DNA of 64,000 bases, taken from the NCBI GenBank assembly GCA_904063045.1, contig CAJFCJ010000011.1, positions 806,001-870,000 on the forward strand, read 5' to 3'. A model generated the notes under the pieces. That model had not been told where the DNA came from. It did not search any database and saw only the letters and a program-made list of their open reading frames with translations. This DNA comes from Dimorphilus gyrociliatus. Its lineage: Eukaryota; Animalia; Annelida. Made by a program: the position numbers and the translations under genes. Shown here piece after piece: positions 1 to 41,810 of this stretch; position 1 is the first letter of the stretch; every line of letters starts with the position of its first letter.

Positions 1-30
1 TTTTTAGCTTACAGTTTTAATACTTCCTAG

Positions 31-2011
31 AAATCATACCAAGATCGATACTGACAACGGTATTTCAAGAACGACACTATCTTATGATAGCTATGGGAGA
101 CGGAACTTTATATTACTTTTTAATCAGTCCATTTGATGGTGAGCTTATACACTGTTTCTTACACCTTGACATTCCTAATAAGAATAACTCCTAGGCAATA
201 TTCACAATCGTAAAAAAGTGACTCTTGGAACGCAGCCTCTTCATATTCGTCATTTCACATGGAGGGGAATTACAAATGTCTTCGTTTGTTCTGATCGGCC
301 GACTGTTATATTTTCTTCAAATCAAAAGCTGGTTTTTTCAAATGTTAACTTAAGGACAGTCAGCTATATGTGTTCTATAAATTCAAAAAACTACAAGGAC
401 ACGTATGTACTATCAATTTGACATTGGAAATACAAAAATATTGTTTTTTGCAGATTATTGTTAGTCAGTAATGATGGTATATTATTTGGTGAAATTGATG
501 AAATGCAAAGACTTCACACTAGAACCTTTGAACTGAACGAAAGTCCGCGAAGAATAGCATATCAACCGGAGACTAAGACATTTGCTTTGTTAACCAGCAG
601 ACGAGACACGAGGGGAAAGGGCAGTAGACAGACAAACCATTTGCGAGAATCTGCTAGCACTGGTTGCTCAAGCGTTACAACAAGTGAAATATCACCTATT
701 ATTCTGAAAAATTTAAGAATACCTAATTTTAAGGAGGGTGATATTATGGAAATGTTTAATGTGCTTTTTTTAGATCAGTATACTTTTGAAGTCATTCATT
801 GTCACAAGTTTCAACCATACGAATATGCTTTGTCAGTTTGTACTGCAAGTCTGGGGAAAAGTAAGGAGACATATTTTGTTGTTGGGACAGCATTCGTTTT
901 ACCAGAAGAAACTGAACCTAAATATGGCCGTCTATTTGTTTTTAAGAATGAGCAGGGATCTATTAGACAAATATCAGATGTTGATGTACAAGGAGCTCCT
1001 TATTCGATGACTTCCTTTATGGATGATAAAATTGTTTGTACTATAAATGGAACAGTACGAGTTTATGAAATGGGAGCTGATAATTACTTAAATTTAGTTT
1101 GCTCCTATTTTAACAATATTGTGGGACTCTATTTAATAGTAGATAAAGAACGAATTTACATCGGAGATTTATTCAGAAGTGTCACTGCCATAGAGTATAA
1201 ACCCGAGACTGATGAGTTAAAAGGTTGTTTATAAATTTTAATTACAAATGTTAAAATTAATATATTTCATAGAAATTGCCCGCAATTATTCTCACCAATG
1301 GCTAACAACTTTCGCTGTTCCTGAAGCTGACACAGCGATTTGTGCAGATCATTGTTGTAATGTTTTTGCATGCACAAGAGAAGAACAAATGAATCAAGAT
1401 GGAGAACTAGATACAGAAATGAAAGATTGTGGGCTTTTTCACTTAGGGGATTCCATCAATGTTATCAAAAAAGGATCTCTTGTTAAACAAGACTTAATGG
1501 ATAGATCTATTGAACTTGGAGTAATGATGCTTTTCGGCACAATAAGTGGTGGAGTCGGTGTTGTTGTTCAAATACCAAAAAACTACTTCGGCCTCTTAAA
1601 AGAACTACAAGACAGAATAGTGAAAATTGTTGGTAGTGTCGGCAAAATAACTTACGATGGGTATTTTTTTACAACTTAATTAAATCTGCCTTTCACATTC
1701 AATATTATTGCTCAAAACAAAGCCTGCTTTATATCAATTTTTTTCAAAATTTTAGGTGGAGAAACTATAAAGATGATAGAGGAGAAAAGCCATCATATGG
1801 ATTTATTGATGGGGACATAATCGAATGCTTTCTAGATCTGCCTATTATCAATCAAGAAGAAATAGTGAAAAATTTAGAGGTAAGTTCTTCAAAAATATAC
1901 TAAAAATCGTCTTCACCTTTATAATTACAGTTGGAAGATAATGGAAGTAGACGTCCAATTGAACATCACGAAATGGTTGGATTAGTCGAAGAATTAAGTA
2001 GAATACATTAA
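31..2011 (+). CDS. DDB1: DNA damage-binding protein 1, 3' part (gene starts upstream of window); exons about 31-138, 195-402, 454-1223, 1273-1660, 1756-1879, 1931-2011
   Basis: Spliced translation gives EIIPRSIL...[58 protein letters not shown] and the C-terminal EELSRIH*, all collinear with DDB1. GT-AG junction phases match. Confidence 0.93.
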
Positions 2012-10190: not shown

Positions 10191-13100
10191 TTAGTCGTAG
10201 AGGTTATCCGTCTTGGAGTCACTATGATCGATATCATTTATATACTTTGATTTTTGTCTGAACCATTGAAAAAGTTTTTCGTCGAAATATTTATTGTTGA
10301 GAAAGTCTTCCCAGACGGAATATTTAGAAGGATGTTGTCTTTCTGCAGGACTTTCAAGATTTGCAGAAAATTTCTGACTATTCATTGAAGACTGTGTTGT
10401 CTCGTGATCCACCTAGAAAAGTATAAAAATAAAGGTAAAGTACAATAAAGTCTGGACACATATGACATGCTGAAGATATGCTGTATATAAAGAATAACTT
10501 TTTAGTATTTTAGACATAATGTTGATTAATAGAAGAAAGTGAGAGTAGTTGATATCACCAAAATAGCCTCACGAAAACTGCCGAAATTAATGAAACTGAC
10601 ATACCTGGTGATACGACATTTTTATAACTTTCTCTATCTTTTTTTAAAGACTGGTTAAAAATAAAAAAGATGATAAAAAATATTGACATTTTAAAATAAG
10701 TTGTTTGATCTTTATCATGAGATGCTAGCACTAGCAGTATTCGAGCAACATGTTTATATTTTAATAAGTTTACTCACTTTTTCTAAGTTGAGATAATGAT
10801 CAGTGTAGTATTTGGGGTAGTGCACTGTACCATAAAATTTAAAGCTAACGTCCGTTAATCGTCCATAATTATTCTTTCTTTCTCCAGAATCCCTTACAAT
10901 AAGAGTCCATTCACCGTTGGGATTTTCACCCCACGAATGCACACTCATGAAAGGCCAATATTTTAATCCATCACTTGAATTATCAGCTGGTCGTTTTGGT
11001 AGCAGGGTTGTATCTGTTTGAGTCGGAGATTTTAATATAATATGAAGATCTCCCCTTCGTGTATAAGACATGTTGACCATAATAACTACATGTTCAAGGA
11101 AGCGAATCTTACATGTTTCTACCTTGAATTTAATTTTTAATTCATCACCGCTTGTCAATATCTGTGGAAGTTGATGCCTGTTAGACAATTTTTCACAAAT
11201 TTCCTGAGGAGAAACGTTCTCCCAAGTGCTTTTGTCTGCAGCATTGACTAATCCAACCGCATTTAATAAACCAAAGCCGAAACGACTATTAACCCAAAAT
11301 CCGGCTCCATTTTTCTTCCAGCCTTCATTTTCTTGTAAAGGTTCTTTTCTAGATGTGAAAGCGACTAAGTGCTGAAGATCTCTCCAAGTTATTGTTGGGT
11401 TGGCTTGCAGAACTAGTGCGAATATTCCAGCTGCCATTGGAGCTGCGGCCGATGTTCCGGTATGTCTATTTGTACATTTATTATGAAGATCAGTGCTAAT
11501 AACCATTGCTTGATCCGGTCCACTCCCTGAGCAAAAGAATTATCTGACGTTTAGAATTATATAGTTCAAATAGCCAAGCTATTTAAACAGAGTCTTGACA
11601 TGGACGACCAAATTTGTATTAAATATAAGGTTATTATCTTAAACATTCTCACCTGATGAGTAGGCAGTTGTCATGGTACTTGGACATTTTTCAGAATACC
11701 ATGGAGTCGTTCTACTTTGTGTTGCGGAAGATACAGACAGTGTATATATAGAACTAGTATATCCATCGCAACTGCAACTGTCACCATACGCTCCTCCATT
11801 ACCCGAAGCCCAAACATATATAACACCAAGACCTCTTCTGCCATATTTGGCACCCTCTTCTAAAGCTTTACTCGTTAACCTGCTCGGACCTTCCATGGTT
11901 TTTCCATTATCTTTCGGTCCCCAGCTAGAAGAAAAGATATCAACATATTGGTTTTTAAAACTTAATGCTGCGGCCTCCAGTCCATCAGTTACTGTTCCAT
12001 CTAGCATACGAATTCCTCCTATTTTAGCATCGTATGCAACGCCAGTTCCACAAATTTTATTATCAGCCTCCATTGCAACTTCACCAGCGCATCTCGTTCC
12101 ATGACGATTCTCATCTGTTGGATCATATCTTGGGAAGGGATCAGGATCATTACCGTTTAAGTCAGTACTTGCTAATGGATCCTACAGATGTTAAAGGACT
12201 TATAATGATTTTCAGTAAAAAAATACCTTACATAGTTTTTTATCAAATCCGTATGATTATGTTCTAAGCCGTCATCCAATATGGCTACTCGAACATTTTT
12301 TCCAGTGAAGCCTTTGGCCCAACATGGAATAACTCCAAGATCTTCTTTTACAGTTTTTCCTGACTCAGCAAGAATATTATCATTACTGACGCCTAGGTCT
12401 CTTTTCTAAAATAAAAATAAGATGCTAATGAAGAGGCAGTAAAAAGAAAGAGAATCTTTTCAAGTTCGATTGATAGGGTAAGATTGAAGTTTATTCAGGA
12501 CTAAAGAAATTTTGACTGGGGTCAATTAATACGTACGAGATACCATTCATCACCAAAAAGTTTATCATTATAGTAGACATTCCGATAGGCTTTATCTGAA
12601 TCTCTTTTGCTGATAATAGAGCGCTTGACTCTACTAATGGCAACTTGTTGCTCCGCCCATTTTACCTGAAACGGAAGAGAGAACTCTAACAGCTGTTTTA
12701 TTAAATAATATAAAAATTATAGAAAAAAATCAATAGCTTTGTGGTTTTGTATGTAATTGTATAATTAAATGTTTATGGCACAATATGTTGCAAATGCAAA
12801 AAGAAAACTTTTTTGATTGGAAATTCATAGCGATTATAAATCAGATGAAATATTTTATAGTTTTACATTTTTTCTTTTAAACTGATGGCCACGGTACACT
12901 TATCATGGTTTACACTAAAAGAAATAGTCGTCATTTTATATTCATTAAATAATATTTTATTACTTTAAGTCCAATAGAGCTCAAGTTTGACGTTAAATTC
13001 ACTCTATCGTAAGGTAAGAAACTGTTGATTGCATTTTCGCCGCGGGAAGGGAGTTATATTGCAAACAACGCTTAAGCACGAATAGCAACGATAAGGACGG

Positions 13101-16389: not shown

Positions 16390-17040
16390 CTTGTCCGAAG
16401 AAAATGAATAAGGTGAAGATTTGTCCGTTCAATGAAATAACTACACGTGTCAAGCATCTAAGGGAAGGAACATATGGGAAACGGAATGAAAGAACTTAAC
16501 GAATGCACTTTCAGACATGCGCACTAGCAATCAAAATCAAATCAAATTTGAAACAAAATGTATTGATACTTTTTAGTTACAAATTTAAATATGAAATTTC
16601 TCTCAAAAATAAGTTTTCATGGACTTTGGGAAAATGTATAAAATTTTTCCAATAATTCTAAATATATAATGCTTACCTAGTTAGCTCATGTTAAAAAAGT
16701 TAATTTAAAAAATTATGCTTGTTGAAAATTACTCTAATTTTCTTAACAAAAAGAGCCAAGTTAATATGTTGTAATTGTCTCTATAGTTTATTGAACAGCA
16801 GCATTATATGCTTAAGCAAATATTTTTTAAAAAGGAGCTATAGAATATAATTCATTTACTATTTCTTTGAAGTTCTTGAAGGGGAAAGTAGGCTAAATTC
16901 CGACGCTCATCACGATATTGAACTATACATTGTAAGCATGACATAGCAAAAAGTTGTCATTGAATTCGCCACTGAGATACAATAGCAGGTGTCGCCACTT
17001 TTGGTGTTAAATTTAGTTCATTAGCTCCTGTTCAGGAAAC

Positions 17041-20000
17041 ATGAGCTACAAAATTCGTGTTTGCCTACTTGTGTTTACGATTTTATATGGAAGATTAACT
17101 TTAGCTCACGTCCGCTTAACTTTTCCGCCGGCTCGGAAATACGATTGGGACTTTTTAGACAATGTTAGGACTAGCCATCCTTGTGGAGTTCCCCAAGGTA
17201 TACGCCTTAACAGTTATAGTCAATTTTAACAATATGTAACGTGTTTTATATTCAAAATAATAATTCTAAATTTAGCAAAAGACTCTTTGAGTCTTTTTAT
17301 TATTAAAAATATTTATTTTTTTTTTATTAAAACTTTTTTTGTTTTGTCTGAAAAAGGGGGCGAAATGTTATAGGGCGTATTTCATTGAGTGCCTAATATA
17401 AATATATAAAAATTTCAATATAGGTTTTGGCCCGTTCACCGAATTGGTAGAAGAATCTAGATTGAATGTAACATGGCATCTAGCATACGCTCACAGGGTG
17501 AGTCTTTAAAATAATGTGTATATAGTATTTTACTAAATTTTGTCTTAGTGAAGTTTCATTTATACTATTTTCTCCTGTTTTAAAATACATAGGGAGGTTA
17601 TCGATTACAAATCCTAGAGGGTTCATCTACAAGGTATACTCTAACCAATCCAGACAAGTTTGAAGGTCTAACTGATGGAACGTAAGCAGGAGCAAAAAAA
17701 TTAATAATTAAAATTTAATTCAATCTTAAATATTTTTCAGTCGCCAATTTCATACCATTCAGCTTCCTAAAGGCTATACTTGTGAAAGATGTACTATTCG
17801 TTTACTTCGACAGGCCACCGAATGGTCTGGTGGATACTTGTTTTGGAGTTGTGCCGATGTCAAAATATTGCCCAAATTATCAACAGCACCAAAATGCCCT
17901 AAGCGTTTATTGAATACAAACAACATAGAAAATTCATGCGCAGCAAAATGCGCATCTGGAGTATGCCAAGAAAACAATCCACCCGAAATTTGCCTTGTTG
18001 GCAAGGTCTCAGACTGCGGTGGGGAAACTAGAGGTAAATGTGAAAGAGTAGCCTCTTTCACCAAACCATGGAATCGCTGTTTCTGTACTCCTGGATATAT
18101 GGGAGAGAAATGTGAAAAAGGTATACTATTATTATTTTATTATTTTACAATTTTTAAATGATATCTCATTCTAGAATCCAGCATTAAAGATAAACAAGAT
18201 ATTATGCTTGGAAAAATGAATAAACAAGTCGTCGTCAAAGATAAATTTAATGTATATTATCGTTTAATACAGGTAGTCATGCTAATTTCTCGCAATAAGC
18301 TATAACATTCTTAGAATTCATTTTTAGGATATAAACGAACTGGAAGTTGTTCTAAAAGTAAAGAGTACATCATGGGTGGCAATCGGGTGGAGGCCTTCAA
18401 GTATATATTACATATTTTTAATACATATTTTTAATACTGATCTTGTCATCCTAACAATTCTTTGTAGAAACAAGAAATACATGCAGAGCTTTTCCTAAAC
18501 TTGCAACCAGTCAAGGAAAGCCAGAAGGAACTGCTGAACCAGAGGGTGAAGGGAAACCTGAAGGAACTGCTGAACCAGAGGGTGAAGGGAAACCTGAAGG
18601 AACTGCTAAACCAGAGGGTGAAGGAAAACCAGAAGGTGAAGGGAAACCTGAAGGAACTGCTAAACCAGAGGGTGAAGGGAAACCTGAAGGAACTGCTGAA
18701 CCAGAGGGTGAAGGAAAACCTGAAGGTGAAGGGAAACCTGAAGGAACTGCTAAACCAGAAGGTGAAGGGAAACCTGAAGGAACTGCTAAACCAGAGGGTG
18801 AAGGAAAACCAGAAGGTGAAGGGAAACCTGAAGGAACTGCTAAACCAGAGGGTGAAGGGAAACCTGAAGGAACTGCTGAACCAGAGGGTGAAGGAAAACC
18901 TGAAGGTGAAGGGAAACCTGAAGGAACTGCTAAACCAGAGGGTGAAGGAAAACCAGAAGGTGAAGGGAAACCTGAAGGAACTGCTAAACCAGAGGGTGAA
19001 GGGAAACCTGAAGGAACTGCTAAACCAGAGGGTGAAGGGAAACCTGAAGGAACTGCTGAACCAGAGGGTGAAGGGAAACCTGAAGGAACTGCTGAACCAG
19101 AGGGTGAAGGAAAACCTGAAGGTGAAGGGAAACCTGAAGGAACTGCTGAACCAGAGGGTGAAGGGAAACCTGAAGGAACTGCTAAACCAGAGGGTGAAGG
19201 GAAACCTGAAGGAACTGCTGAACCAGAGGGTGAAGGAAAACCTGAAGGTGAAGGGAAACCTGAAGGAACTGCTGAACCAGAGGGTGAAGGAAAACCAGAA
19301 GGTGAAGGGAAACCTGAAGGAACTGCTAAACCAGAGGGTGAAGGGAAACCTGAAGGAACTGCTAAACCAGAGGGTGAAGGAAAACCAGAAGGTGAAGGGA
19401 AACCTGAAGGAACTGCTAAACCAGAGGGTGAAGGGAAACCTGAAGGAACTGCTGAACCAGAGGGTGAAGGAAAACCTGAAGGTGAAGGGAAACCTGAAGG
19501 AACTGCTAAACCAGAGGGTGAAGGAAAACCAGAAGGTGAAGGGAAACCTGAAGGAACTGCTAAACCAGAGGGTGAAGGGAAACCTGAAGGAACTGCTGAA
19601 CCAGAGGGTGAAGGAAAACCAGAAGGTGAAGGGAAACCTGAAGGAACTGCTGAACCAGAAGGTGAAGGAAAACCTGAAGGCGAGGGAAAACCAGAAGGAA
19701 CTGCTGAACCTGAAGGAGAGCCAGAAGGTGGGGGAGAGTTTCACCCGATGGACTGCACTGATATTGTCATCGGTTCTGCTCGAGGTATATACTCAAACAT
19801 TGGTGACTACTATACGAGAGATAGATCTACCCCTCAAAGAGATAGGTTTTATGGTGGGGAAGATTCTCTAACTGCAGCTTTTGGCTACGAAGAAAATGGA
19901 GAAACCCTAATTGCCTTTAGAAGGAAACTTGACACCAAAGATCCTGCTGACCATGCAATTACCGAAGGCTTCATGCATGCTATATTTGCGAGAGGACAAG

Positions 20001-21772
20001 AGCATGGAAAATATATACATCGTCCGGCTTCGAGCTTAGAAGCAAATAGAGCTCAGGATAAAATGTTTTATCGTAAAGATGAAGTCAAATATCACGGACA
20101 CGGTGATCAGAGAGTAATTAGAAACATTAATTTCTTGGAAAAAAAAGATCTAAAAGAGGACGGATTTTGTTTTGGGGAGAGAAGGTTTCCAGTCAATTGT
20201 GATGAAAATTGTGACTACCATGCTAGCTGGATATACAATGAGAGCACTGATATAATCAGTTTCACAATTATAACAAGACAAGCTCCTAACACTTGGACTG
20301 CTGTTGGTTTTGCTGTAGGCGAAGTTATGGAAAACGTTGATGTTGTCATCGGAAATGCAGAAAGTGGTACAGTTTGGGATGCTTATATTGATGGTAGATA
20401 TAGCGCTCCAGTTCGGGATGAAATACAAAACATTAGGAATACTTCTATATCTCGAATAGACGGTGTAACGACCATGCGTTTTGAAAGGCCTAGGATCTCT
20501 TCAAATGAAAAATTTACTTTTTCTGATACTCAATGTCTTAATTTTTTCTTTCCCGTCTCTCCAGGTTCTTTTGATACTAAAAGTCAGATAATGCAGAGAC
20601 ATATTGCAACACCAATTATACAAAACAATATTTGTGTGGGAAAATGTACACCTGGAACAACTGCTAAACCAGAAGATGAAGGAACTGCTGAACCTGAAGG
20701 AACTGCTGAACCTGAAGGAACTGATAAACCTGAAGGAACTACTAAACCAGATGGTGAAAGAGGACCAAATATCACAGCAACAATTAGAATAACATCACTG
20801 CCATGGTCACCAGATCTGAAGAATAAGGAAAGCCCTATCAGAAAGAAGACAGATAAACTTTTGAGCAAAGAACTTATGGCAGTTTTGAAAGAATCAGTGA
20901 AAAAAATAATAATAACAGACTATAATATTGGAAGTGTAATTGCTTCCACTGTTCTAGTTCTTAATAAAAAAGATTCTAATAACAAACAAACGGTAATTAA
21001 CAAGCTTAAACATCAAATTGACAGAGGAATTTTGGGAAACTTCACAGTCGATAAAGATTATCCACTCATTGACAATCAAAGTGAAAAAACTTCAGGTGAG
21101 ATTTTTAGGTTAGCAGAATTAAATAAAAATTTTCATTTATAGTTAACGACGACGGCTTATCGGAGGAAGATAAAATTATTATTTCTGTTGTCGTATCTGC
21201 TCTTCTTATGCTGTTGATATTTATTATACCGTTGACTATCTGTAAAATAAAGAATAAGAAAATCCCTATCGACAGTCAGGATAAGAAAAAAGTAAAACAT
21301 TATATAAATAAGTTAAAATTCTAAATTTTAAACGTTTTAGATATTTGATGATTTTGCTGATAATCGTGTACAACCAAATGAGTCAAGTGATATTCAAACA
21401 AAAATTGATAAACATGAAAATTTAGGTACAGGTGAAAATGGATATTCAACCTTCGTTTCTTCTTCAGATGAAAAACCTAACAAAGTCCAGTCATCAACTA
21501 TCCAATTATCAAGCCGGAATAATATCGACGAAGCTGGGAAGGACAAAGTCACTGATCCAATTTTGAAACCGTTTCAACCTGTATCGTATCAGCCTCCTTT
21601 TTATAATGGAAGCAACTCTCAAAGTTTAACGAAAACAATAAATACAACCCCACACAACTTTAATGACAGTAACACCTTGCCTAAAAAATCCTCTGATGAC
21701 GGCACAATCTACGAAAGCACTGTTTCACATTCTGATCAACCAAAAATATCTAAAATTCGAGTTGGAAAATAA
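17041..21772 (+). CDS. Type-I membrane protein of about 1359 aa: signal peptide, His-brace LPMO-like domain, Cys-rich/EGF, DOMON (split by PEG repeat), DOMON, SEA, TM, cytoplasmic tail
   Basis: Nine exons: 17041-17197, 17424-17497, 17593-17681, 17741-18120, 18175-18272, 18328-18400, 18468-21095, 21143-21291, 21341-21772; all GT-AG with consistent phases, 4080 nt in total. Motifs: TLA|HVRLTFPPAR, WHLAYAHRGG, FWSCADV, CFCTPGYMGEKC, WVAIGW...HPMDCTDIVIG...KYHG, WTAVGF...MENVDVVIG...RH, GSVIA, TM IIISVVVSALLMLLIFIIPLTIC. Confidence 0.88.
18521..19729 (+). repeat. Coding minisatellite of 36-bp and 54-bp units encoding PEGTA(E/K)PEGEGK with optional extra PEGEGK (27 GGAACTGCT cores, 403 codons)
   Basis: Near-identical units CCTGAAGGAACTGCT(G/A)AACCAGAGGGTGAAGG(G/A)AAA. 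The true frame is fixed by the acceptor at 18467 and runs in frame into HPMDCTD. Confidence 0.97.
20651..20758 (+). repeat. Short degenerate copy of the PEGTA repeat in the DOMON2-SEA linker
   Basis: PGTTAKPEDEGTAEPEGTAEPEGTDKPEGTTKPDGE, built from the same GAAGGAACTGCT core. Confidence 0.85.
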
Positions 21773-22706
21773 AATGGCGAACTTTCGAATTTGAAATTGT
21801 TTTATCTCCATAGAGGACAACTCGAAACAAAGCAATTTTTAATATTATTGTCTTCAATTTTAGTTATTATTTTATCATACTTATAAGACTTGTTTCTTTT
21901 AACGATTATTTTTTGACATTATGAAAGTACTCAAACGGATCTTTGCAATTGAATTTTTCTTGCCTCTGTACAAATGTTTGTAGTCTTAAATACTCAGTCT
22001 ATTTGTTTTCAAGAACTTTTGACGAAAGACTTAAGAATGAAATCTGTATGATTACACATGATAAGTGGAATTTATATTGGCATATTATGATTACTTTCTA
22101 GAATTATGTTGTGCCAAAGTGTTCGTGAGAAAATAAAAGTTTTGCATTGCAACTTGAACTAATTAATAACCGTTTGCGTTTTTTATGAAAGGTCTCGTTG
22201 AAAAATTTCAAAACATTCTTGATTAAAAGTAATAAAATTCTATAAAATACATTGTACAGAGTTCATAACGAATAAAATAAAACCCCTATCAAGAAGCGGA
22301 GGGAATTACAAAGCTAAAGAAACTAACACTTAGAAGATTAATAAAGAGACGGTTAGTTTCAAAAAGAGTATTTTAACATCTCTTATTTCCAATTTATTCT
22401 AAAAATTTGACATTTTTTGACAAACCGGACATAAGCTAGGATAGTCAAATATGATATAGCGACATCTAGTGGCAATTAGCTTTTTAGTTACCGGTTTACT
22501 CTTCGCCTAGGATATCTCATAAAGATAATAAAATATAAATTCATTTTCTGAATTTGACAGCAAAAAAATATATAACAGACTTCAACGTAATTCTACTTGT
22601 TTGATTATTGACCGTAATGCTTTAAAATAAAATATAAATTTATTATCGCTCATTTCACAAATTTGATATTTGTAAGATTTACAGTGAAGATCTTAAAAAG
22701 TCCACG

Positions 22707-24031
22707 ATGTCTGGAACTCTTGCATGCCTAGAACATTTAACTTTTCCTCACTCGATGCAAACCGCACTACAGCATATGGAAGAGTGGCTTTCTAACGGTC
22801 GTGTCCCAGGTATCAACATTTCATCTGAAGAATTTATGAAACAAATCTGTGATGATTACGTTTTTTCGACGAAGTCAAAGAAAAATCCGAAAGTAAACTA
22901 CAGGTGTATGTGAATTTCAGATAGAGCTGATTTTGAATTTTTTTATACAGAGCCAGTTAACAGGGTTACAGGAGCTGTTTCTAGTTACTAAACTAGCCAA
23001 AGCATTTTCAAAAAGAGGATCTCATGAGAGTATACGTCAAGAACTCTTTTGGACTCTTTTCCCTCCCAGTCACATGACCCCTCAGAGGCAACAGGTTTTA
23101 ACGAAAGTAATTGGAATTGGCATTGCAGAAAAAGTTGTTGAGGTTCTTGAATTCGGTGCTCGATTCATCAACGCTTCCGGCCCAACCTCGCCGTCATCAC
23201 AATATATAATACAGCATACAATCGATGATTACGTAAATTTGTTCCCTAATAATCCCTCGTTGCAGAATATACATTACGAATCAGAGTTATTTACTTGTTC
23301 CTTTCTATGTACCTGCTCTCAAATTCTTAAACCACCAAGAAAAATAGAAAAAAATTTTGACATTGAAAAGAAAGAATTAACTTTGGATATTCTTAAAATT
23401 ACATCTAATTGGTTGTACTCAAAGCCAACTATTGGAATAGCTAGCTTGCCAAAGCAAGAGGGAGCTTTACTGCCCCCTGATCCTAATTGCAAGTCTCCGA
23501 CCCCTGTTGTTGGATTAATTATGTGGATATGCAAAGCTGCTTTAATTTGCTATCCACAACAACTTTCGAATGAATGGAAAAAGTATTATTCAAGATTACG
23601 TAAGGGTATATGTGGCTGCCTTTGGGAATTTAAAAAATTAAAAGGATCAGAACAAGCTCCTCTGATTGCAAATACAGATGTCATTCATATGGCTAAAGAT
23701 CTTAGTAAAATGTGTAATGAGCTACAATTGCGGAACGAATGCATTGTAATTGAGACCGTGGATGTATTTTTGGATTTTCTAGATGTTGCAATAGGATCGT
23801 TAACAGTTCGAGCTTCGCCGAGTATAAATTCTAGTCTTTTGTATATAATACAAATTCTGTTAAATTATTTTATTTACAGATGAGATTCGAGAAGTGCTTC
23901 AAAGTTTGCCCTCGACAATATCAGTAAAAAAGTCAAGTATCAAACTATTACCGAAAGATATGTACTTTAAATCGGCTGGCCTTGGTGATGATAGCGAAGA
24001 AGAATTGGAAGAGCAAATGGATTATTATTGA
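22707..24031 (+). CDS. INTS15: Integrator subunit 15 (C7orf26)-like (3 exons)
   Basis: LTGLQELFLV...SIRQELFWTLFPP...RQQVLTKVIGIGIA...VLEFGARFI parallels C7orf26 LNSLQELQLL...VRQIIFSSLFSP...RMSLLGKLVSMAVA...VLECAASWL. Confidence 0.7.
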
Positions 24032-25543: not shown

Positions 25544-28500
25544 CTATGAAGAATCTCCCAAGCCAACACCACTGGATATACATGCTGAACGTAGAAGGTC
25601 TATTTGATGAGAATCAGAATTTTCGGGTGAATTGGGAATAGAGTCCATTTCGTTGATTTCAATATGAGTACTGGCAATAATTTTAACATCTTCGTTGGTT
25701 TCTTTTTTTTGCAGCTTAATATCATAGAAGCATTTTTCTTCAAGCAATTTATTTAAATCAGTTACTTGATGAACAATATTGGTCTTTGAATTCGTTCTTT
25801 TCAGATTATCATAAAATGCTTTGTTTTTTGTTCTTTCAAATTTGCTTATTTTTTCGTCGAATGTTTTTGCTATATCATGTTTTCGTATTCTGCTTTTGAA
25901 AGGACATAGATCAATGTTCATCAGTTCAAGAAATTGGCTATCTTCTTCGACCCATTTTCGTCTAATATCGTCATACTCCATAAAATTCTTAGCATATTCT
26001 CGGCCATCCAGATTGTATTTTTCTTTGAACCTTATCATTATATTCCCAAAAGTTTGTGATCGTAAAATATCCCCAAGCTCTTCCAATAGGTTAACTTGAA
26101 AGAATATATACTCTATCGGTTCCTTTTCCCCTTCAAAAAATTGCAAAACACTTCCATGCTTAAGATTGGTCACATCGTAAAACGAACTTTTTGGTTCCAT
26201 CTAAAATAATACTCAATAAGAACAGAACACAGAAATATATTCAAAAAGGAATACAATACCGGTTTAGAATGGGTTTGCCTATTGTTTATACATTCTAATA
26301 ATAAACTTCCAAGTAACTTAGTAGTTAGTCTTTTCGAATTTTCACTCGCCAAGTGGATAGAATTATTATCTATTTTCATTTTTTCTCTAGCTAGTACTTG
26401 AAATGAATAACTATCTTCCTGTAATTTTATTACATTTAAAAAAGTTTATGTAAAAGAGTACTAACATCGACTAATAATAATGTTCCGTGAGTATTTTCAA
26501 CGTATTTTTCACCAGGACGTTTCACTCGTAATTTTCCATCATATTTACCTAAAAGTTATTGCAAGGGATAAATGTTATGTTGTAAAATGAAATTACTTAT
26601 GAATAGATCGACTGTGGGGTCCATAATGTACAGCCAATCTGTCAAATCATTTGTATTTAACAGGATCGCATAAAGGCGCTTCATGCCAGTTTCTGAAATT
26701 CAGGTTAAGAAAGCATTATTCGAAATATAAAACAAGACAGCTGTATATGTAAAAATTTCCAAAGCTTACTGTAGGCGTGCAATTCAATATCATCGGCAAT
26801 AGTACAAACAGGCTTATCTATACTCTTTGGGAAGTCTTGTTTAATTTGTAGTTTATTTCGTAAACTTTCTTTTGCTAGGCTTCTTATCGCTGCATTATCC
26901 AGCTTTTCAAGAGCATCATCTGAAAAATATATAATAGTAAACAAGTTTAATTTTATCAAATTGCAAATTATTATACCTAAATTTTGCACGTCATCTTGAT
27001 TACAGAGCTTATTCAATTCTTCAGTTATAAGGGCATTACTGATTGCAGTAGCACTCCCTGAAATTGTCAATTTATAAGAAATCATCTATGATAAACTTCA
27101 CATACCGAATTGTGAAATCGAAGGACTTTCAAATTTAGCAATTTCTCCTTTGGTAAATTTAGAAATGTTGCACCCCTGGATAAAGTATAGGCCTTGTTCT
27201 TCACAGTTGCTAATTTTTACATTGAAAAAGCTGTCCTCCAGATATTCTACAATTAGAATTCTAACCAGTTTTTGAATATCTGGATTATCATTAAAGCTTA
27301 TAAAGTTCGTCAATTTCAACCCAAGAATATGCAGAAAGAGTAGATTATCCAAAACCTCTTTACCATATTCATTTTTCACGTACTCCATCAGGTTTGCAAT
27401 ATATTCTGAAGAAGCTTCTTCATTATTTTCGTCCTCTTCTGATATAATGAGTAAATAACTTGCAGGTTTTCTAGAACCTTTTATCTCTACACAGGACTCA
27501 GATGTAATTAATTCGCTATTTTCAAAAGTTGTATTATTTTCTTTCATATCCATATCTACAATTTCCAAACTATGATCATCGCCGTCCATATCATAATCTG
27601 CATCAATTGCCTGAACCTCTGTTTCAAGAGCAATAATACTGTCAGCGTCTGATAGACATTTTGCATTGAATGCATACATGATTTCACGGCTTTTTTCAAA
27701 TGCAATTTCATTCTTAACTTCCTCTTCCCCCTTTCCTGTATTTTCAATTATCTCACTTAAAGATAGCATAACCTTGTCATATTCCTCGTCAGAATATTCT
27801 AATAATAATAGTTCTTCATTCATTGTTCCAAAAAATGGGAATCTTTCCTCTTGAGATTCTAGAAAGGAGTGAATATCTTCAGCAACAGAATTAATACAAT
27901 GTTCTTCATATTCTTGGACTTTTTCATTCTCATTCTGCAAGGAACTGGTGTCTCTTACAACATTTTCACGGTCGTCACTTAAACATTTTAAGTTTTCATA
28001 CAGCGTAAATTTTCTTTTAGCAAGTTTCCACGTGCTATTGAGTTGTTCTTTAAGATCCTCAATTGTGTAGGCATCTCCTACAAAAAATGTCTGATCTTCT
28101 GAGTTTGTTACAAGGCGTCTGAATTCATTTCGTTTATCACACTGTTGGAAAATTACCCATTCAACACTCTTCACATCTACGTCAGATAGTCCAAAAACTT
28201 TAATATATTCCCTTTCCTCTTCGGCGTTTCTGCTGTTTAGCGTGTTGGAAAAATATTCAAATAGACGTCTCTCTTCATCAGTAAACTCAACTTCCGATAA
28301 AATCCCTTCTTTATCAGACATCTCTAATGTTGACATTTTATTTATCTTTTCTAAATCAGTTAGATAGATATCTTCAAATATTGATCTCAATAGATTAGAA
28401 AATTCCCGAACAAACTCCTTTTCTTCTTCATAGTGAGAACTATATTTCTCTTTCTTTAATTTTTCTAATATATAATGCTCGAGTGTTGTGGCCACTAAAA

Positions 28501-31500
28501 GTTTTAAGTTTTTGGGATCAGTTTTGTACTTTTCTGTACTATTATGAAAATGAAAAGACGGATGGGGAATTTGATTCAAAGCCATAACCTTTAACTGAAG
28601 TTGTTTTAGTTTTATCATATTATCAGCCGCTTTAATCCAAGCACCTTTTCTTGCTTTGTCATGAATATTCAAAGAAAATAAGAGGCATTTAAAAGATTTT
28701 GTCAAGTTTGTAAATTCATTTTGAACGATGTGATAAGCTTGAAAGTCCAGGTTTTTTAACTCAGCGTCAATTGCCATCAATCTTTGTTTAAATTGAGAAA
28801 CTACTTCAGCTAAGTCAAAAGAGTCTGTGTTCAGTAGATAGTCGTAAATTTCTTGGAAAAGGTTATTCCATTCAATTACGTTGTCTTCCATGACGTTAAC
28901 ATTAAGGATAACATTAGAGGTAACATTGTGTTCTATTTTATTACAATTTGTTTGAGTATTAAATCCTTTAGAAAGTTTAGTAAATTCATCTTTGGATCTT
29001 GTGTATGAAAATGCTATTAAAATTTCTGCCTCAGACTCAAATCTATCAATAAAACTTAAGTTAGCATGAGCAGAATTTTCTCTAGAAAATGAGCAAATAT
29101 AGCGTGTTATATTCCAAATAAATTGATTTGTGAAGAAAGTCGTCATATGGTAGTCTAATAGTTCAGCTTCTTCAAAAAGTAGATCTACTTGATCAATTAG
29201 CTCTTTTAATCTTAATCCCAATTCTTCTTCATAATTTTTCAAATCATTAAATAGATGACGAAATTTTTGTCTTACAAACTTGAGTATTACTCTTTCGTTG
29301 AATACTATAGTATTATCTTTCTTTGAAACTTCAACACAATGTACTACGTTGTTGCAACTAATAGAATATCCAGAAGTGTGTGCTTCCTCCATGATAGCCT
29401 TGAAGCTCGCATCAGTCGTTTTTAAGGGGTATAAGCCTTTTTTATCCACCACTTTTTGTCTGCCATATCGAAACCGATAATAAATTTCTATGTTGTCCAT
29501 TTGCTTAATAAAATTTTTAGGAATTGGGTTCAATGTCATATTTACTCTAAATTGTGTTTCAGTTGGAGAGTTTTGTTGCAGGCTATCACAGTTCAACGAA
29601 CCGTTATTGTTCGTTAGCTCTTCATTGAAAGAAATATCCTCCATTAGCGATGATTTTGGTATAAAATGAATATCTCCATCTGTCGTTTCAAATTCTTCCA
29701 AATTGGGTAATGAGTCTAAATAGAGTTTTATTTCTTTTGGTGGTTGGTTCAAAGTTTGAGCAATTTTTTCCAAGCGCAAAATAATTTGAAAAATTTTCTT
29801 CCAGATCTCTCTTTTTTCAGGTTCAGATGGTTTAGGTTGGCAACAAAGTGACTCCTTTTTAATGAAAAATTTAATAATGTCGTAAAATTGATTGCCTGCT
29901 TCTTCTTTCAATTGTTGCTCCTCTCTTTTGCTGAGCAATTTAATATCTCTGACAATCTCAGTATCATTTCTTTCATAACCTATTCTTCTTGAATGATCGA
30001 TAATCTAAAATGTACTTTTAAATGAATTTTAATCTTAAAAATTTCAAATTTCGTACCTGCCCACAGTTTCTTACAGCTAGGTCCGACCCAGTGAGAACTT
30101 CCTTTAATAAATTCTGACGAGTTCTGGAATCATCTAGACGCTCAATAACGCAGCGAAAATAGCTTTCACTTCCTGGTAAATCCGGATTACGAAAAGATTC
30201 TTTCTTATTTTCGAATTGAATAGTGATTGCACCTAGTTTTTTGTATTCTTTACAGAGCTTTTCACAAAATTGCTTTGTAATATCATTTAGATCACTTTTC
30301 TCGACGGTAATTGACCTTGCCTTCTCGTTAAGAAGAGAATTGGATTCCTATAGCACAATATTAAAAAATTTAATTTCTTTTCAGAATAATTTCACTTACC
30401 ACAACATGTCTATGGCAGATAAAGCTTGTTGTTTTATAAGTTCTAGGAGGAATACAGCAATCCAAATGATAAGAGTTATCGCATTTAATGCATTTATTTG
30501 TATCTGGTGAAGAGCATACTCTGAAATTTAAAGATTTTGAATCGCTTTTTCATATTCATAAACCTCATATTTTAAGTAATTAATATAATGTTAATTAAGT
30601 TGAAATTACGATGCTCAATACTATACATATACTATATATTTCTTTTAATTGAGTCAAATGCTCACTTTCGACAAACTGGACAGACTACTAGTCCTCTGAC
30701 ATTTGAACTCATTTCTTTAATTCCTATGGAATGTTCGCTTGGTTTCTTATTTTTGCGGTCAAATTTCCGTTTTCGTTCTTTAGGATTTGAACTTTAGTAA
30801 ATATTTAAAATAAAATATTATCTAAGTACTTTTTTTATCTTTTCCACTTTCATTCAGGAGATCATTCATTATATTTTCAAACGATGAAGGATTCCAATTA
30901 GCAAAGAACCTAGCTGATAATTCATCATTTCCAAATATTTGTTGCGTTGCTAGATGCTACAAAGGGTATCAAGTATTATTTTGGGGCCATCATTAAACTT
31001 ATACTCAAAAAAGACCTAACTGCTACCTGTAATAGAATCAAATTATCATACATTTTCACATCATTATCCTGTTTAAAAAAAGGAAGAAAAAAAATAGAGT
31101 AAAATATTAAAACACTTATTATTCAGATAAATTAGGAAAACCGACTGTAATATTGTTGAATTCATTTTCCCTTAAAACTTCAAAATCAGATGCTGTATAA
31201 AAAATTATATATGAAATTAATTAATTCATTCATTGAGAAACCTACTCTTTTTATCATTGTTGTTTGATTTATCTTCAAATATATCAGCAAGGTAGTTGTT
31301 ATCTAATTCAGCTTCTGCAGCAGAAGGAGAAAAATGTTGCCAAAGAAGGGAAAGTTCTTTCTTACGGCTGAGGTAGTAAGCGTCGTCAAATTTGATATTC
31401 TGAAACATTAATACTTTTGATGAACTTAACATTTCTTTCATTTTACATACCGAAATTGGTCCTTGACATTTGCTACATAACCAACTCAAAGGATCAGTTT

Positions 31501-41700: not shown

Positions 41701-41810
41701 AACCATTATTTCTAAGTTCTGAAAGATACAACTTATTGGAAAAGCAGTGGGCAACGAATGCTTTAGAAAATGCTTGCTTGGAGTGGGTCTATCACAGTAA
41801 CCAAATGTAA
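35709..41810 (+). CDS. UBR3: E3 ubiquitin ligase UBR3 (UBR box, RING-H2)
   Basis: CGLVWTSNFVAYRCRTCGISPCMSLCADCF...HDYNMFRSQAGGACDCGD, TFHLPLHRY, YKQTHFCNSMADPDLYLLQ, split RING (CTIC...TCGHYLH..C...CPLCRR), WGSVYLDEHGEEDKNLKRGKPLFLS. Confidence 0.96.

What the first reader, a model, noticed from the sequence alone, without database searches (positions are those of the whole stretch)
17041..21772. Candidate self-contained surface redox system: LPMO-like domain fused to two heme-type DOMON domains and membrane-anchored
In fungi, LPMOs receive electrons from the cytochrome domain of cellobiose dehydrogenase, a DOMON-family fold with Met/His heme ligation. Here one polypeptide carries the His-brace domain plus two DOMONs, each retaining both ligand positions: DOMON1 HPMDCTD (Met 19748) with KYHG (His 20093), and DOMON2 VMENVD (Met 20327) with QRHI (His 20600). 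SEA, TM and a tail of about 160 residues follow. This suggests an intramolecular heme-heme-copper wire for oxidative remodelling of cuticle, chitin or matrix glycans, or for copper/ROS handling, at the cell surface. There is no cytochrome b561 or flavin domain, so an external reductant or partner is needed. Related EGF-DOMON proteins probably exist in other invertebrates; I cannot check whether this interpretation is already published.
Basis: partly seen in the sequence, partly recalled or inferred. Interest (0 to 1): 0.92.

Follow-up and report, generated by a model that had tools for sequence, protein, structure and literature searches.

The report
Membrane copper-LPMO domain fused to cytochrome-type DOMONs
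This is a real, transcribed nine-exon animal gene of the uncharacterised "nahoda" family; it joins a copper-binding domain of the kind found in polysaccharide-cutting enzymes (LPMOs) to two domains that look built to hold heme, so it may be a self-wired redox device on the cell surface, though none of this chemistry has been tested.

Summary
A nine-exon gene (17041-21772, + strand, 1359 aa) encodes, in order: signal peptide, LPMO-fold domain, EGF region, DOMON1 (split by a 428-aa Glu/Gly/Pro/Lys repeat), DOMON2, SEA, one TM helix and a 159-aa tail. All eight introns appear as GT..AG joints in spliced RNA contigs.

- **N-terminal domain:** it belongs to the LPMO superfamily. A family profile hits the insect AA15 structure 5MSZ (E 4e-6). 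An AF2 model of a 51%-identical homolog's domain matches AA15 (Z 12.6) and X325 (Z 11.6). His1 is present in 186/186 relatives, the second His in 221/233, and Phe at the axial position in 200/210.
- **DOMONs:** They are near-invariant: 98/99 and 99/99 in DOMON1, 92/92 and 91/92 in DOMON2. The Met aligns with the heme-ligand Met83 of a fungal AA8 cytochrome. The DOMON2 model matches cellobiose dehydrogenase cytochromes (Z about 12).
- **Family:** this is nahoda (named in Drosophila). It occurs in arthropods, molluscs, nematodes, echinoderms, hemichordates and tunicates, with 1-8 DOMONs. I found no functional study.

The heme-to-copper relay is plausible and apparently unpublished, but it is inferred. 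No metal or heme binding, substrate or electron donor has been shown.

The parts
17041..21772 (+). Whole coding region of the nahoda-family gene: 9 exons (17041-17197, 17424-17497, 17593-17681, 17741-18120, 18175-18272, 18328-18400, 18468-21095, 21143-21291, 21341-21772 including the stop), 1359 aa
   Evidence: Splice sites and reading frame. All 8 introns seen as GT..AG joints in spliced RNA contigs.
17041..17106 (+). Signal peptide (22 aa, ...GRLTLA|H); predicted cleavage would make His23 the mature N-terminus
   Evidence: Sequence. In relatives the domain starts 17-37 residues into the protein and always with His. Cleavage itself is inferred.
17107..17870 (+). LPMO-fold copper-type domain (about 130 aa over exons 1-4). 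His23 (His1 of the mature protein) at 17107-17109, His76 at 17492-17494, axial-position Phe141 at 17841-17843, conserved Glu134 at 17820-17822
   Evidence: Family profile vs PDB hits 5MSZ AA15 at E 4.4e-6, aligning with His91 and Tyr184. AF2 model of a homolog's domain, pLDDT 88.5. Foldseek and VIA-align give LPMOs only at the top. Pfam BIM1-like and LPMO_10 each hit 34/43 homologs. Conservation; coordinates.
17895..18119 (+). Cys-rich EGF-like region (teneurin-type EGF in homologs)
   Evidence: Sequence. Pfam EGF_TEN, EGF_2 and EGF_Teneurin hit at the same position in homologs. The window's own exon alone gave no Pfam hit.
18120..18514 (+). First half of DOMON1 (exons 5, 6 and the start of exon 7), ending in the strand WVAIGWRPS
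   Evidence: joints.
18515..19726 (+). Insert of about 400 aa inside DOMON1, a Glu/Gly/Pro/Lys tandem repeat (PEGEGKPEGTAE-like; DNA periods 18/36/54/90). It ends just before the candidate heme-ligand Met. The full gap between the WVAIGWRP strand and the MDC motif is 428 aa
   Evidence: Tandem Repeats Finder. Open only in the gene's frame. A 41-540 aa insert at the same point is found family-wide. Transcribed according to depth, but not bridged by one contig.
19727..20134 (+). Second half of DOMON1. Met718 at 19748-19750 and His833 at 20093-20095 are the candidate heme b ligands. His786 and His808 are also conserved
   Evidence: Pfam DOMON 5e-12. Met in 98/99 and His in 99/99 homologs. Coordinates.
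20165..20647 (+). DOMON2. Met911 at 20327-20329 and His1002 at 20600-20602 are the candidate heme b ligands
   Evidence: Pfam DOMON 3.7e-18. Met 92/92 and His 91/92. AF2 model of the window's own sequence, pLDDT 89.8. Matches DBH DOMON and CDH/AA8 cytochromes and FRRS1/CYBDOM DOMONs. The Met aligns with AA8 heme-ligand Met83.
20677..20748 (+). Short PEGTAE-type linker repeat (18-bp unit x4) between DOMON2 and SEA
20762..21095 (+). SEA domain with a G|SVIA motif (20930-20944) of the autoproteolytic G|SVVV type
   Evidence: Pfam SEA 2.7e-8. The motif is shared by 12 of 81 TM-bearing long homologs. Cleavage is inferred.
21175..21243 (+). Single transmembrane helix (IIISVVVSALLMLLIFIIPLTIC)
   Evidence: A TM helix is present in 81 of 86 long homologs.
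21244..21769 (+). Cytoplasmic tail, 159 aa (intron at 21292-21340). It contains a PPFY motif that is not conserved in the family

Best explanation
The gene encodes a type I membrane glycoprotein of the nahoda family. I read its ectodomain as a built-in extracellular redox chain, working as follows.

1. Signal-peptide cleavage leaves His23 as the first residue. Its amino group and side chain, together with His76, form a histidine brace that binds one copper, with Phe141 at the axial position, as in AA10/AA15 LPMOs.
2. After an EGF spacer come two DOMON domains. [quoted passage not shown]
3. The DOMONs sit on flexible acidic Pro/Glu-rich tethers. They take electrons from an outside donor, such as ascorbate or a b561-DOMON reductase, and pass them to the copper. 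This is the way the swinging CDH cytochrome primes fungal LPMOs.
4. The reduced copper then acts with O2 or H2O2 on a cell-surface or matrix target. Oxidation of a glycan (chitin-like or another matrix polysaccharide) is my first choice. Copper reduction or hand-off in the Bim1/X325 manner is a close second.
5. The SEA domain, TM helix and tail anchor the device and may allow it to be shed.

Shown here: gene structure, transcription, domain folds, and residue conservation and equivalence. Inferred: signal-peptide cleavage, Cu and heme binding, direction of electron flow, the donor, and the substrate.

My odds: nahoda-family architecture 0.95; copper bound at the brace 0.75; heme bound in the DOMONs 0.7; heme-to-copper relay 0.5; glycan substrate 0.3.
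For: Gene and transcript.

LPMO domain:
- The family profile hits TdAA15A (5MSZ) at E 4.4e-6. The family His aligns with His91 and the family Phe with axial Tyr184 (ligand roles from PMC5823890).
- An AF2 model of the homologous domain of P0058 (about 51% identical to the window's) has pLDDT 88.5.
- The Foldseek top 36 are all LPMOs.
- VIA-align gives AA15 Z 12.6, LaX325 11.6, AA16 11.3 and CBP21 11.1. All align from model residue 1 to the mature N-terminal His.
- Pfam BIM1-like and LPMO_10 each hit 34 of 43 homolog domains.
- His1 is present in 186/186 relatives, the second His in 221/233, Phe in 200/210 and Glu in 202/211.

DOMONs:
- Pfam assigns both.
- Met/His conservation is 98/99 and 99/99 in DOMON1, and 92/92 and 91/92 in DOMON2.
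- Over 301 DOMON copies, Met is present in 297/299 and Met plus His in 152/157. The only two copies without Met also lack His, so the pair is lost together.
- The Met aligns with chain residue 65 of 6JT6. That should be heme ligand Met83 of CcPDH if the chain starts at residue 19 of the expression construct.
- Human DBH, whose DOMON is not known to bind heme, has Leu at that position.
- The model of the window's own DOMON2 (pLDDT 89.8) matches CDH, PDH, EBDH and NXR heme domains at Z 9.5-12.4, well above the next unrelated fold at 7.7.
- DOMONs of relatives P0142 and P0144 pass Pfam's CDH-cyt gathering score.

Obligate fusion: all 7 long proteins I scanned that carry the N-terminal domain also carry 1-8 DOMONs.
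Against: - Nothing biochemical has been done. I found no paper on nahoda function.
- The strongest single structural match of DOMON2 is the DBH DOMON, which is not known to bind heme.
- Equivalence of the His ligand rests on position and spacing only. It was not aligned residue by residue with a solved cytochrome.
- The copper domain is minimal (about 130 aa). It lacks most of the loop region that makes up the flat substrate face of AA10/AA15, and it scores as well against non-catalytic BIM1/X325 as against LPMO_10.
- At the position of AA15 Ala89 the family has a conserved Tyr, so the site differs from known LPMOs.
- There is no reductase domain and no redox partner gene in the window.
- The long disordered linkers mean that heme-heme or heme-copper contact cannot be read from the sequence.
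- The N-terminal structure model is of a 51%-identical homolog, not the window's own spliced sequence.
Confidence: 0.5

Rival explanations
1. Copper-handling device rather than an enzyme acting on glycans. The N-terminal domain would behave like fungal Bim1/X325: it captures Cu(II) at the cell surface, and the heme DOMONs reduce it to Cu(I) for hand-off to a Ctr-type importer or for detoxification. It keeps the heme-to-copper step of the main explanation but has no polysaccharide substrate.
For: - Pfam BIM1-like_dom matches 34 of 43 homolog domains over nearly the whole profile (best E 1.6e-7).
- LaX325 is the second-best structural match (Z 11.6, 1..139 vs 1..141) and is of similar small size.
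- The protein is membrane-tethered; Bim1 is too (the latter from my own knowledge).
- CYBDOM DOMON hemes have been implicated in ferric and cupric reduction in plants (PMC10784544).
Against: - AA15, a true LPMO, is the best match by both sequence profile and structure.
- The axial position holds Phe, as in chitin-active AA10/AA15B.
- Known X325 proteins need no fused cytochrome.
- Up to eight DOMONs in relatives seems excessive for a one-electron reduction.
Confidence: 0.22
2. Non-redox surface protein: a mucin-like adhesion, sensor or barrier molecule. The DOMONs would bind sugars or another ligand, the LPMO-fold domain would be a binding module only, and the conserved Met/His/His residues would be structural or would bind some other metal.
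For: - EGF, SEA with a G|SVIA motif, long Pro/Glu-rich disordered regions, a TM helix and a tail are the parts list of shed surface mucins and receptors.
- DOMON-superfamily members include sugar-binding modules: CBM9 appears as a weak structural match.
- The best DOMON match is DBH, which is not known to bind heme.
Against: - His1 is invariant in 186/186 relatives, directly after the signal peptide. The second His and the axial Phe are each at 95%. That pattern is hard to explain without a metal site.
- The Met/His pair is kept in nearly all of about 300 DOMON copies and is lost jointly in the only two exceptions.
- DBH itself has Leu at the Met position.
Confidence: 0.15
3. Dedicated producer or consumer of extracellular reactive oxygen. 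The reduced copper site would turn O2 into H2O2 (the uncoupled LPMO oxidase reaction) or remove H2O2 or superoxide, for signalling, matrix cross-linking or defence. There would be no specific glycan substrate.
For: - It has the same cofactor anatomy as the main explanation.
- LPMOs without bound substrate are known to make H2O2 (my own knowledge).
- The small domain lacks an obvious extended binding face.
Against: There is no direct evidence. Strong conservation of surface residues outside the metal site (D83, T85, E112 and Y52 in mature numbering) hints at a specific partner or substrate.
Confidence: 0.1

Closest known systems
Drosophila nahoda ('DOMON-like domain-containing protein nahoda') and its orthologs in arthropods, molluscs, nematodes, echinoderms, hemichordates and tunicates
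   Same: Same domain order: signal peptide, His1 domain, EGF, a DOMON split by a Pro/Glu-rich insert, further DOMON(s), often SEA, TM and tail. Identity is 41-47% over the DOMON region and about 50% over the N-terminal domain.
   Different: The window's insert is a very regular Glu/Gly/Pro/Lys tandem repeat of about 400 aa. Its SEA keeps a G|SVIA motif that most insect members lack. No member has a published function in the library I searched.
AA15 LPMOs of arthropods (TdAA15A, PDB 5MSZ) and AA10 LPMOs (e.g. CBP21)
   Same: Same fold (Z 12.6 and 11.1). N-terminal His after a signal peptide. The second brace His is in the same strand motif (family 'PH.GG' against AA15 'APHIGF'). An aromatic residue sits at the axial position before the C-x-D strand; it is Phe, as in chitin-active AA10 and TdAA15B.
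   Different: About 130 aa instead of 170-200, lacking most of the loop region that builds the substrate face. Tyr replaces AA15 Ala89. Fused to EGF, DOMONs and a membrane anchor. No activity has been shown.
X325 / Bim1 LPMO-like copper-binding proteins of fungi (LaX325, PDB 6IBH/6IBI; Pfam BIM1-like_dom)
   Same: Similar size and fold (Z 11.6, aligned end to end). Full-length Pfam matches, mostly below the gathering score, in 34 of 43 homolog domains. Tethered to the cell surface.
   Different: Animal rather than fungal. TM anchor rather than GPI. Fused to DOMONs. Only 13% identity. Whether an Asp completes the copper site as in X325 could not be tested.
Cellobiose dehydrogenase or PQQ-pyranose dehydrogenase cytochrome domains (AA8) that donate electrons to LPMOs
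   Same: DOMON-superfamily beta-sandwich (Z 12.1-12.4). The Met aligns with the heme-ligand Met, and a conserved His lies about 90-115 residues later, against 98-99 in CDH and PDH. The flexible tether is comparable.
   Different: In fungi the cytochrome and the LPMO are separate proteins, and the cytochrome is fed by its own flavin or PQQ domain. Here they are one polypeptide with no dehydrogenase domain.
CYBDOM / AIR12 (plants) and FRRS1/SDR2 (animals): heme-DOMON surface redox proteins
   Same: The best predicted-structure matches of DOMON2 are FRRS1 and FRRS1L DOMONs (TM 0.68-0.70), followed by CYBDOMs. In HYP1 a conserved Met/His pair (M90/H174) was modelled as the b-heme site.
   Different: Those proteins pair the DOMON with a cytochrome b561 membrane domain that brings electrons from cytosolic ascorbate. 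This protein has a single TM helix and a copper domain instead.
Dopamine beta-hydroxylase / MOXD1 (DOMON fused to a copper monooxygenase)
   Same: An animal protein that joins a DOMON to a copper oxygenase. The DBH DOMON is the best sequence and structure match of DOMON2 in the PDB (E 4.5e-9, Z 14.0).
   Different: The DBH copper domains are of the unrelated PHM type. Its DOMON has Leu where this family has the invariant Met.

Membership tests
nahoda family (LPMO-like + EGF + DOMON membrane proteins) | Significant full-length similarity to named nahoda proteins | tested here: met
   E 1e-66 to 1e-96 against proteins that NCBI names nahoda (Bombyx, Augochlora, Anticarsia, Pycnogonum, Carabus and others).
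nahoda family (LPMO-like + EGF + DOMON membrane proteins) | Domain order: signal peptide, His1 domain, EGF, split DOMON, DOMON, TM | tested here: met
LPMO superfamily (AA9-AA17, X325) | Immunoglobulin-like beta-sandwich LPMO fold | tested here: met
   On the AF2 model of a 51%-identical homolog (pLDDT 88.5), the top PDB matches are all LPMOs at Z 8.6-12.6. The window's own spliced domain was not modelled.
LPMO superfamily (AA9-AA17, X325) | His as the first residue of the mature protein | tested here: inconclusive
   His23 follows a typical signal peptide (...TLA|H) and is invariant in 186/186 relatives. Structural alignments start at His1 of the solved LPMOs. The actual cleavage site was not determined, and no signal-peptide predictor was available.
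LPMO superfamily (AA9-AA17, X325) | Second histidine of the brace at the equivalent strand | tested here: met
   The family His (His76 in the window) aligns with His91 of TdAA15A and is conserved in 221/233 relatives.
LPMO superfamily (AA9-AA17, X325) | Binds one copper | not testable with these tools
   Needs EPR, ITC or crystallography.
Catalytic LPMO (AA10/AA15 type) | Oxidative cleavage of a polysaccharide; extended flat substrate face | not testable with these tools
   No activity data exist. The domain is about 40-70 residues shorter than AA10/AA15, which argues for caution.
Pfam LPMO_10 (PF03067) / BIM1-like_dom (PF20238) | Score above Pfam's gathering cut-off | tested here: inconclusive
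   Homolog domains score 18-25 bits against cut-offs of 23 and 27. P0058 passes LPMO_10 (24.1 against 23). 34 of 43 match both models at E<=0.01. The window's separate exons gave no hit.
DOMON (PF03351) | Score above the gathering cut-off | tested here: met
   107.7 bits against a cut-off of 32.7, in two stretches.
Heme-binding (cytochrome-type) DOMON: AA8 / AIR12 / CYBDOM | Met ligand at the equivalent position | tested here: met
   The family Met aligns with 6JT6 chain residue 65, which should be Met83, the axial ligand of CcPDH. The alignments are weak (E 0.13-1.1) but reproducible with two different queries.
Heme-binding (cytochrome-type) DOMON: AA8 / AIR12 / CYBDOM | His ligand at the equivalent position near the C-terminal strand | tested here: inconclusive
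   An invariant His lies 91 residues (DOMON2) and 115 residues (DOMON1) after the Met, compared with 98-99 in CDH/PDH and 84 in HYP1. The aligned ranges (model 2..173 against 1D7B 2..180) fit His156 to His163. I could not obtain a residue-level alignment.
Heme-binding (cytochrome-type) DOMON: AA8 / AIR12 / CYBDOM | Binds b heme | not testable with these tools
   Needs spectra of recombinant protein.
SEA (PF01390) | Score above the gathering cut-off; G|S[VI]xx cleavage motif | tested here: met
   34.3 bits against a cut-off of 26.4. GSVIA is present. Autoproteolysis itself was not tested.

The most novel reading that the evidence does not exclude
Invertebrate animals carry a membrane-anchored natural fusion of an LPMO-type copper centre with one to eight cytochrome-type DOMONs. 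Together these form an extracellular electron-transfer chain that oxidatively remodels chitin or other matrix glycans. That would make it the first LPMO with its own built-in cytochrome donor, and an animal counterpart of the fungal CDH-LPMO pair.
Probability: 0.3. Interest if true: 0.85.

Novelty: new variant of a known kind. Interest (0 to 1): 0.62.

Why it matters
- **A natural single-chain test case.** LPMOs need an electron donor. In fungi the donor is a separate cytochrome-carrying dehydrogenase. A conserved animal protein with an LPMO-type copper site and CDH-like cytochrome domains in one chain would allow direct study of heme-to-copper electron transfer.
- **A lead for an orphan family.** It would give a first functional hypothesis for nahoda. 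The family spans most invertebrate phyla, is labelled 'uncharacterized', 'EGF-like' or 'DOMON domain-containing' in the databases, and includes a genetically tractable Drosophila member.
- **An unrecognised surface redox system.** It would point to a cell-surface redox system in animals that is distinct from b561/FRRS1 and DBH.
- **Possible pest-control relevance.** If the target is chitin or cuticle matrix, the protein could matter for arthropod and nematode control, as suggested for AA15.

Tried and rejected
- **Pfam on single N-terminal exons:** only noise. The domain is recognisable only once spliced or in homologs.
- **phmmer of the window's DOMON region against the PDB:** nothing useful. 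A family profile was needed.
- **Finding the window's own annotated protein:** nothing above 47% identity turned up. I therefore modelled the N-terminal structure on the closest full-length homolog (P0058, about 51% identical) rather than typing in the spliced sequence.
- **Conserved signalling motif in the tail:** the window's PPFY (PPxY type) occurs in only 5 of 81 homologs, so I dropped it.
- **Redox partner gene beside it:** the neighbours are CPSF_A/DDB1-like, a furin-type convertase, INTS15, UBR1-like, HECT and SKI-like genes. None is a redox gene.
- **Literature:** searches for nahoda, CG12781, DOMON+LPMO, DOMON+histidine brace and BIM1-like/X325/DOMON found no functional study. One sentence in Voshol et al. 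2019 (PMC6950343) notes an early branch of an LPMO profile tree holding DOMON/EGF and LPMO_10 sequences.
- **The long ORFs at 18446-19744 (-) and 18501-19871 (+):** rejected. They are other reading frames of the tandem repeat, not genes.
- **A cryptic intron removing the repeat:** no joint was seen inside 18476-19630.

Full report
**1. What is in the sequence**

The window is AT-rich eukaryotic DNA, 31-35% GC around the locus. The one exception is a 44% GC block at 18-20 kb, which is a coding tandem repeat.

Three-frame translation and the raw sequence let me build a nine-exon model on the + strand:

| Exon | Coordinates |
|---|---|
| 1 | 17041-17197 |
| 2 | 17424-17497 |
| 3 | 17593-17681 |
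| 4 | 17741-18120 |
| 5 | 18175-18272 |
| 6 | 18328-18400 |
| 7 | 18468-21095 |
| 8 | 21143-21291 |
| 9 | 21341-21772 (including the stop) |

All introns are GT..AG and in frame. The product is 1359 aa.

Contigs of four public runs were laid on 17000-21900. Run X4 is identical to the window, with 0 other letters in its long pieces, and its contigs are spliced.
- One 970-nt contig skips introns 1-6. It therefore links the signal peptide and His exons, the EGF exon and the first DOMON1 exons.
- A 1076-nt contig covers 19630-20705.
- A 1292-nt contig covers 20695-21900 and skips introns 7 and 8.
- Two metatranscriptome runs (coral and marine) show some of the same joints at 90-99% identity.
- No joint lies inside the repeat.

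The caveat is that no single short-read contig bridges the 1.2-kb repeat.

**2. Domain anatomy**

Pfam finds two DOMONs (107.7 bits in all) and a SEA domain (34.3 bits) in the large exon. The order along the protein is as follows (coordinates).

| Residues | Feature |
|---|---|
| 1-22 | Signal peptide |
| 23 to about 152 | His1 domain |
| about 159-233 | Cys-rich EGF region |
| 234-846 | DOMON1 |
| 857-1017 | DOMON2 |
| following DOMON2 | Short PEGTAE linker |
| about 1056-1160 | SEA, with a G\|SVIA motif |
| 1178-1200 | TM helix |
| last 159 residues | Cytoplasmic tail |

DOMON1 is interrupted between the strand WVAIGWRPS and the motif HPMDCTD by 428 residues of Glu/Gly/Pro/Lys repeat, with DNA periods of 18/36/54/90.

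**3. The family**

I searched the DOMON-SEA part while allowing full-length candidates. This gave 122 proteins at E down to 5e-96. They come from mites, insects, crustaceans, horseshoe crab, a sea spider, molluscs, nematodes, sea cucumbers and tunicates. Several carry NCBI's name 'DOMON-like domain-containing protein nahoda'.

A profile of the N-terminal domain, scored against 1.84 billion representatives, found 1326 proteins at E<=1e-3. The named ones add a hemichordate, springtails and an abalone protein of 2975-3266 aa.

All seven long hits that I scanned carry EGF plus 1-8 DOMONs, and often SEA. In two of them the DOMONs pass Pfam's gathering score for 'Cytochrome domain of cellobiose dehydrogenase'. 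The copper-type domain and the DOMONs therefore look like an obligate, ancient fusion.

The disordered insert at the same point in DOMON1 is also family-wide. It ranges from 41 aa in nematodes to 540 aa, and is mostly Pro/Glu/Ser/Lys-rich. A TM helix is present in 81 of 86 long members.

**4. Is the N-terminal domain LPMO-like?** Yes, at the level of fold and key residues.
- **Start position.** In 69 distinct full-length homologs the domain starts with His directly after a signal peptide.
- **Sequence profile.** A 43-sequence profile hits exactly one meaningful PDB sequence, the AA15 LPMO of *Thermobia domestica* (5MSZ, E 4.4e-6). The alignment puts the family His (window His76, in AYAHRGG) on His91 and the family Phe (window Phe141, in YLFWSCAD) on Tyr184. 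The AA15 paper states that His1 and His91 bind the copper and that Tyr184 is the axial residue. It also notes that Phe at that position marks chitin-active AA10s and TdAA15B.
- **Structure.** I modelled the domain of the closest full-length homolog (P0058, about 51% identical to the window's) with AF2; pLDDT was 88.5. Its first 36 Foldseek matches in the PDB are all LPMOs. VIA-align ranks AA15 first (Z 12.6, 24% identity), then LaX325 (11.6), AA16, AA11 and CBP21. Each is aligned from model residue 1 to the mature N-terminal His.
- **Pfam.** BIM1-like_dom and LPMO_10 each match 34 of 43 homolog domains at E<=0.01.
- **Conservation over 253 sequences.** His1 is present in 186/186, the second His in 221/233, Phe in 200/210, and a Glu in the EW motif in 202/211.

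There are differences from known LPMOs.
- The domain is only about 130 aa.
- A conserved Tyr replaces AA15 Ala89.
- An invariant Asp-x-Thr (D83/T85 in mature numbering) has no AA15 counterpart.

**5. Are the DOMONs of the heme type?** Probably.
- **Joint loss.** Over 301 DOMON copies in the enlarged set, Met is present in 297 of 299. Of the 157 copies aligned through the His column, 152 have both. The only two copies without Met (both in P0142) have also lost the His. One Mytilus copy has Met/Lys.
- **Sequence relatives in the PDB.** The DOMON2 profile hits the human DBH DOMON (E 4.5e-9), where the Met column holds Leu. It also hits, weakly, the AA8 cytochrome of *Coprinopsis* PDH (6JT6), where the Met column holds chain residue Met65. 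A Mytilus DOMON gives the same pairing on its own.
- **Identity of that Met.** The 6JT6 paper gives Met83 and His182 as the axial heme ligands and says the construct starts at residue 19. Chain residue 65 should therefore be Met83.
- **Structure.** The AF2 model of the window's own DOMON2 (pLDDT 89.8) matches the DBH DOMON (Z 14.0). It then matches six CDH/PDH cytochrome entries (Z 11.3-12.4), ethylbenzene dehydrogenase gamma (10.7) and NxrC (9.5). Scores then drop to 7.7 for antibody domains.
- **Predicted structures.** Among predicted models the best matches are FRRS1/FRRS1L and then CYBDOM DOMONs. For the CYBDOM HYP1, a conserved Met90/His174 pair was modelled as the b-heme site.
- **Spacing.** The Met-to-His distance here (91 and 115 residues) fits CDH/PDH (98-99) and HYP1 (84).

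**6. How it most likely works**

*Shown:* a transcribed gene encodes a surface-anchored chain that carries an LPMO-fold domain with conserved brace residues. It also carries two DOMONs with a conserved, jointly maintained Met/His pair at cytochrome positions.

*Inferred:* copper sits at the brace and b-heme in each DOMON. The DOMONs, on flexible acidic tethers, accept electrons from an outside donor and reduce the copper. The copper then reacts with O2 or H2O2 at the cell surface.

I put the relay at about 0.5. Within it, I put a glycan (chitin-like or matrix) substrate at about 0.3 overall and a Bim1-like copper reduction or hand-off at about 0.22. A non-redox mucin or receptor reading (0.15) and an ROS-making or ROS-removing reading (0.1) remain open.

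There is no reductase domain and no redox gene among the neighbours. An unchecked note from this scan reports a b561-DOMON reductase gene array elsewhere in the same genome. That is a lead for the donor, not evidence.

**7. Comparison with what is known, and novelty**

The gene is a plain ortholog of a named but unstudied family. I found no functional paper on nahoda. UniProt labels its relatives only as 'EGF-like' or 'DOMON domain-containing'.

One 2019 methods paper noted in a single sentence that DOMON/EGF and LPMO_10 sequences form an early branch of an LPMO profile tree, and left the meaning open.

I did not find the specific idea of a built-in cytochrome-to-LPMO-copper chain in an animal membrane protein in the library. 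Relative to characterised systems (CDH plus LPMO, CYBDOM/FRRS1, DBH) it is a new arrangement of known parts.

**8. Verdict**

Interest is 0.62. This is a family-level hypothesis that could be tested at once in Drosophila or with recombinant domains. It is not peculiar to this genome, and it has been partly foreshadowed.

Noticed in passing
window 18515-19726, and homologs: A large disordered acidic insert always sits in the same DOMON1 loop, a few residues before the candidate heme-ligand Met. It ranges from 41 aa in nematodes to about 540 aa in Lepidoptera. Insect isoforms differ by about 300 aa in total length, which suggests alternative splicing of this insert. Its role next to the putative heme site is unexplained.
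   Followed up: partly
P0142 974-1138 and 1238-1405; P0003 541-698: In a seven-DOMON relative, two internal DOMON copies have lost Met and His together (K/Q and G/A). One Mytilus copy has Met/Lys, a ligand pair I recall from ethylbenzene dehydrogenase.
   Followed up: partly
P0144 / P0266 (Haliotis asinina, 2975-3266 aa): A giant family member has one LPMO-like domain followed by eight DOMONs and seven SEA domains. Its DOMONs score 147 bits on Pfam's CDH-cytochrome model.
   Followed up: no
window 17107-17870 (mature residues Y52, D83, T85, E112): These family-invariant residues have no counterpart in AA15. A Tyr sits where AA15 and AA10 have the Ala that shapes the copper site, and there is an Asp-x-Thr motif and a Glu-Trp motif. 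They may be extra copper-site or partner-binding residues.
   Followed up: no
window 18446-19744 (-) and 18501-19871 (+): Two long ORFs of 432 and 456 aa are merely the other reading frames of the tandem repeat. Automatic ORF callers could mistake them for genes.
   Followed up: yes
window 17000-21900, runs X1-X3: Spliced contigs 90-99% identical to this gene occur in coral, 'invertebrate' and marine metatranscriptomes. The organism or close relatives therefore live in reef or marine samples. Run X3 shows a variant junction at 21092/21141 with 7 extra letters, probably from a diverged relative.
   Followed up: no
window 458-1231 (+), 10754-11503 (-), 22933-23880 (+), 36286-41807 (+), 49324-51087 (+), 58903-59952 (-): The neighbouring genes are ordinary metazoan housekeeping or regulatory genes: CPSF_A/DDB1-like, a furin-type proprotein convertase, Integrator subunit 15, a UBR1-type N-recognin, a HECT ligase and a SKI-like protein. 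The 945-aa ORF at 27098-29935 (-) has no Pfam match.
   Followed up: partly
AFDB cluster hits A0A1X7UB63 and B3S1A9: One hit is a 727-aa 'EGF-like domain-containing protein' with 43% identity to the N-terminal domain. Another is a more distant 549-aa protein. By accession series I recall these as sponge and placozoan entries, but the tool hid the organism names. If correct, the domain predates Bilateria.
   Followed up: no
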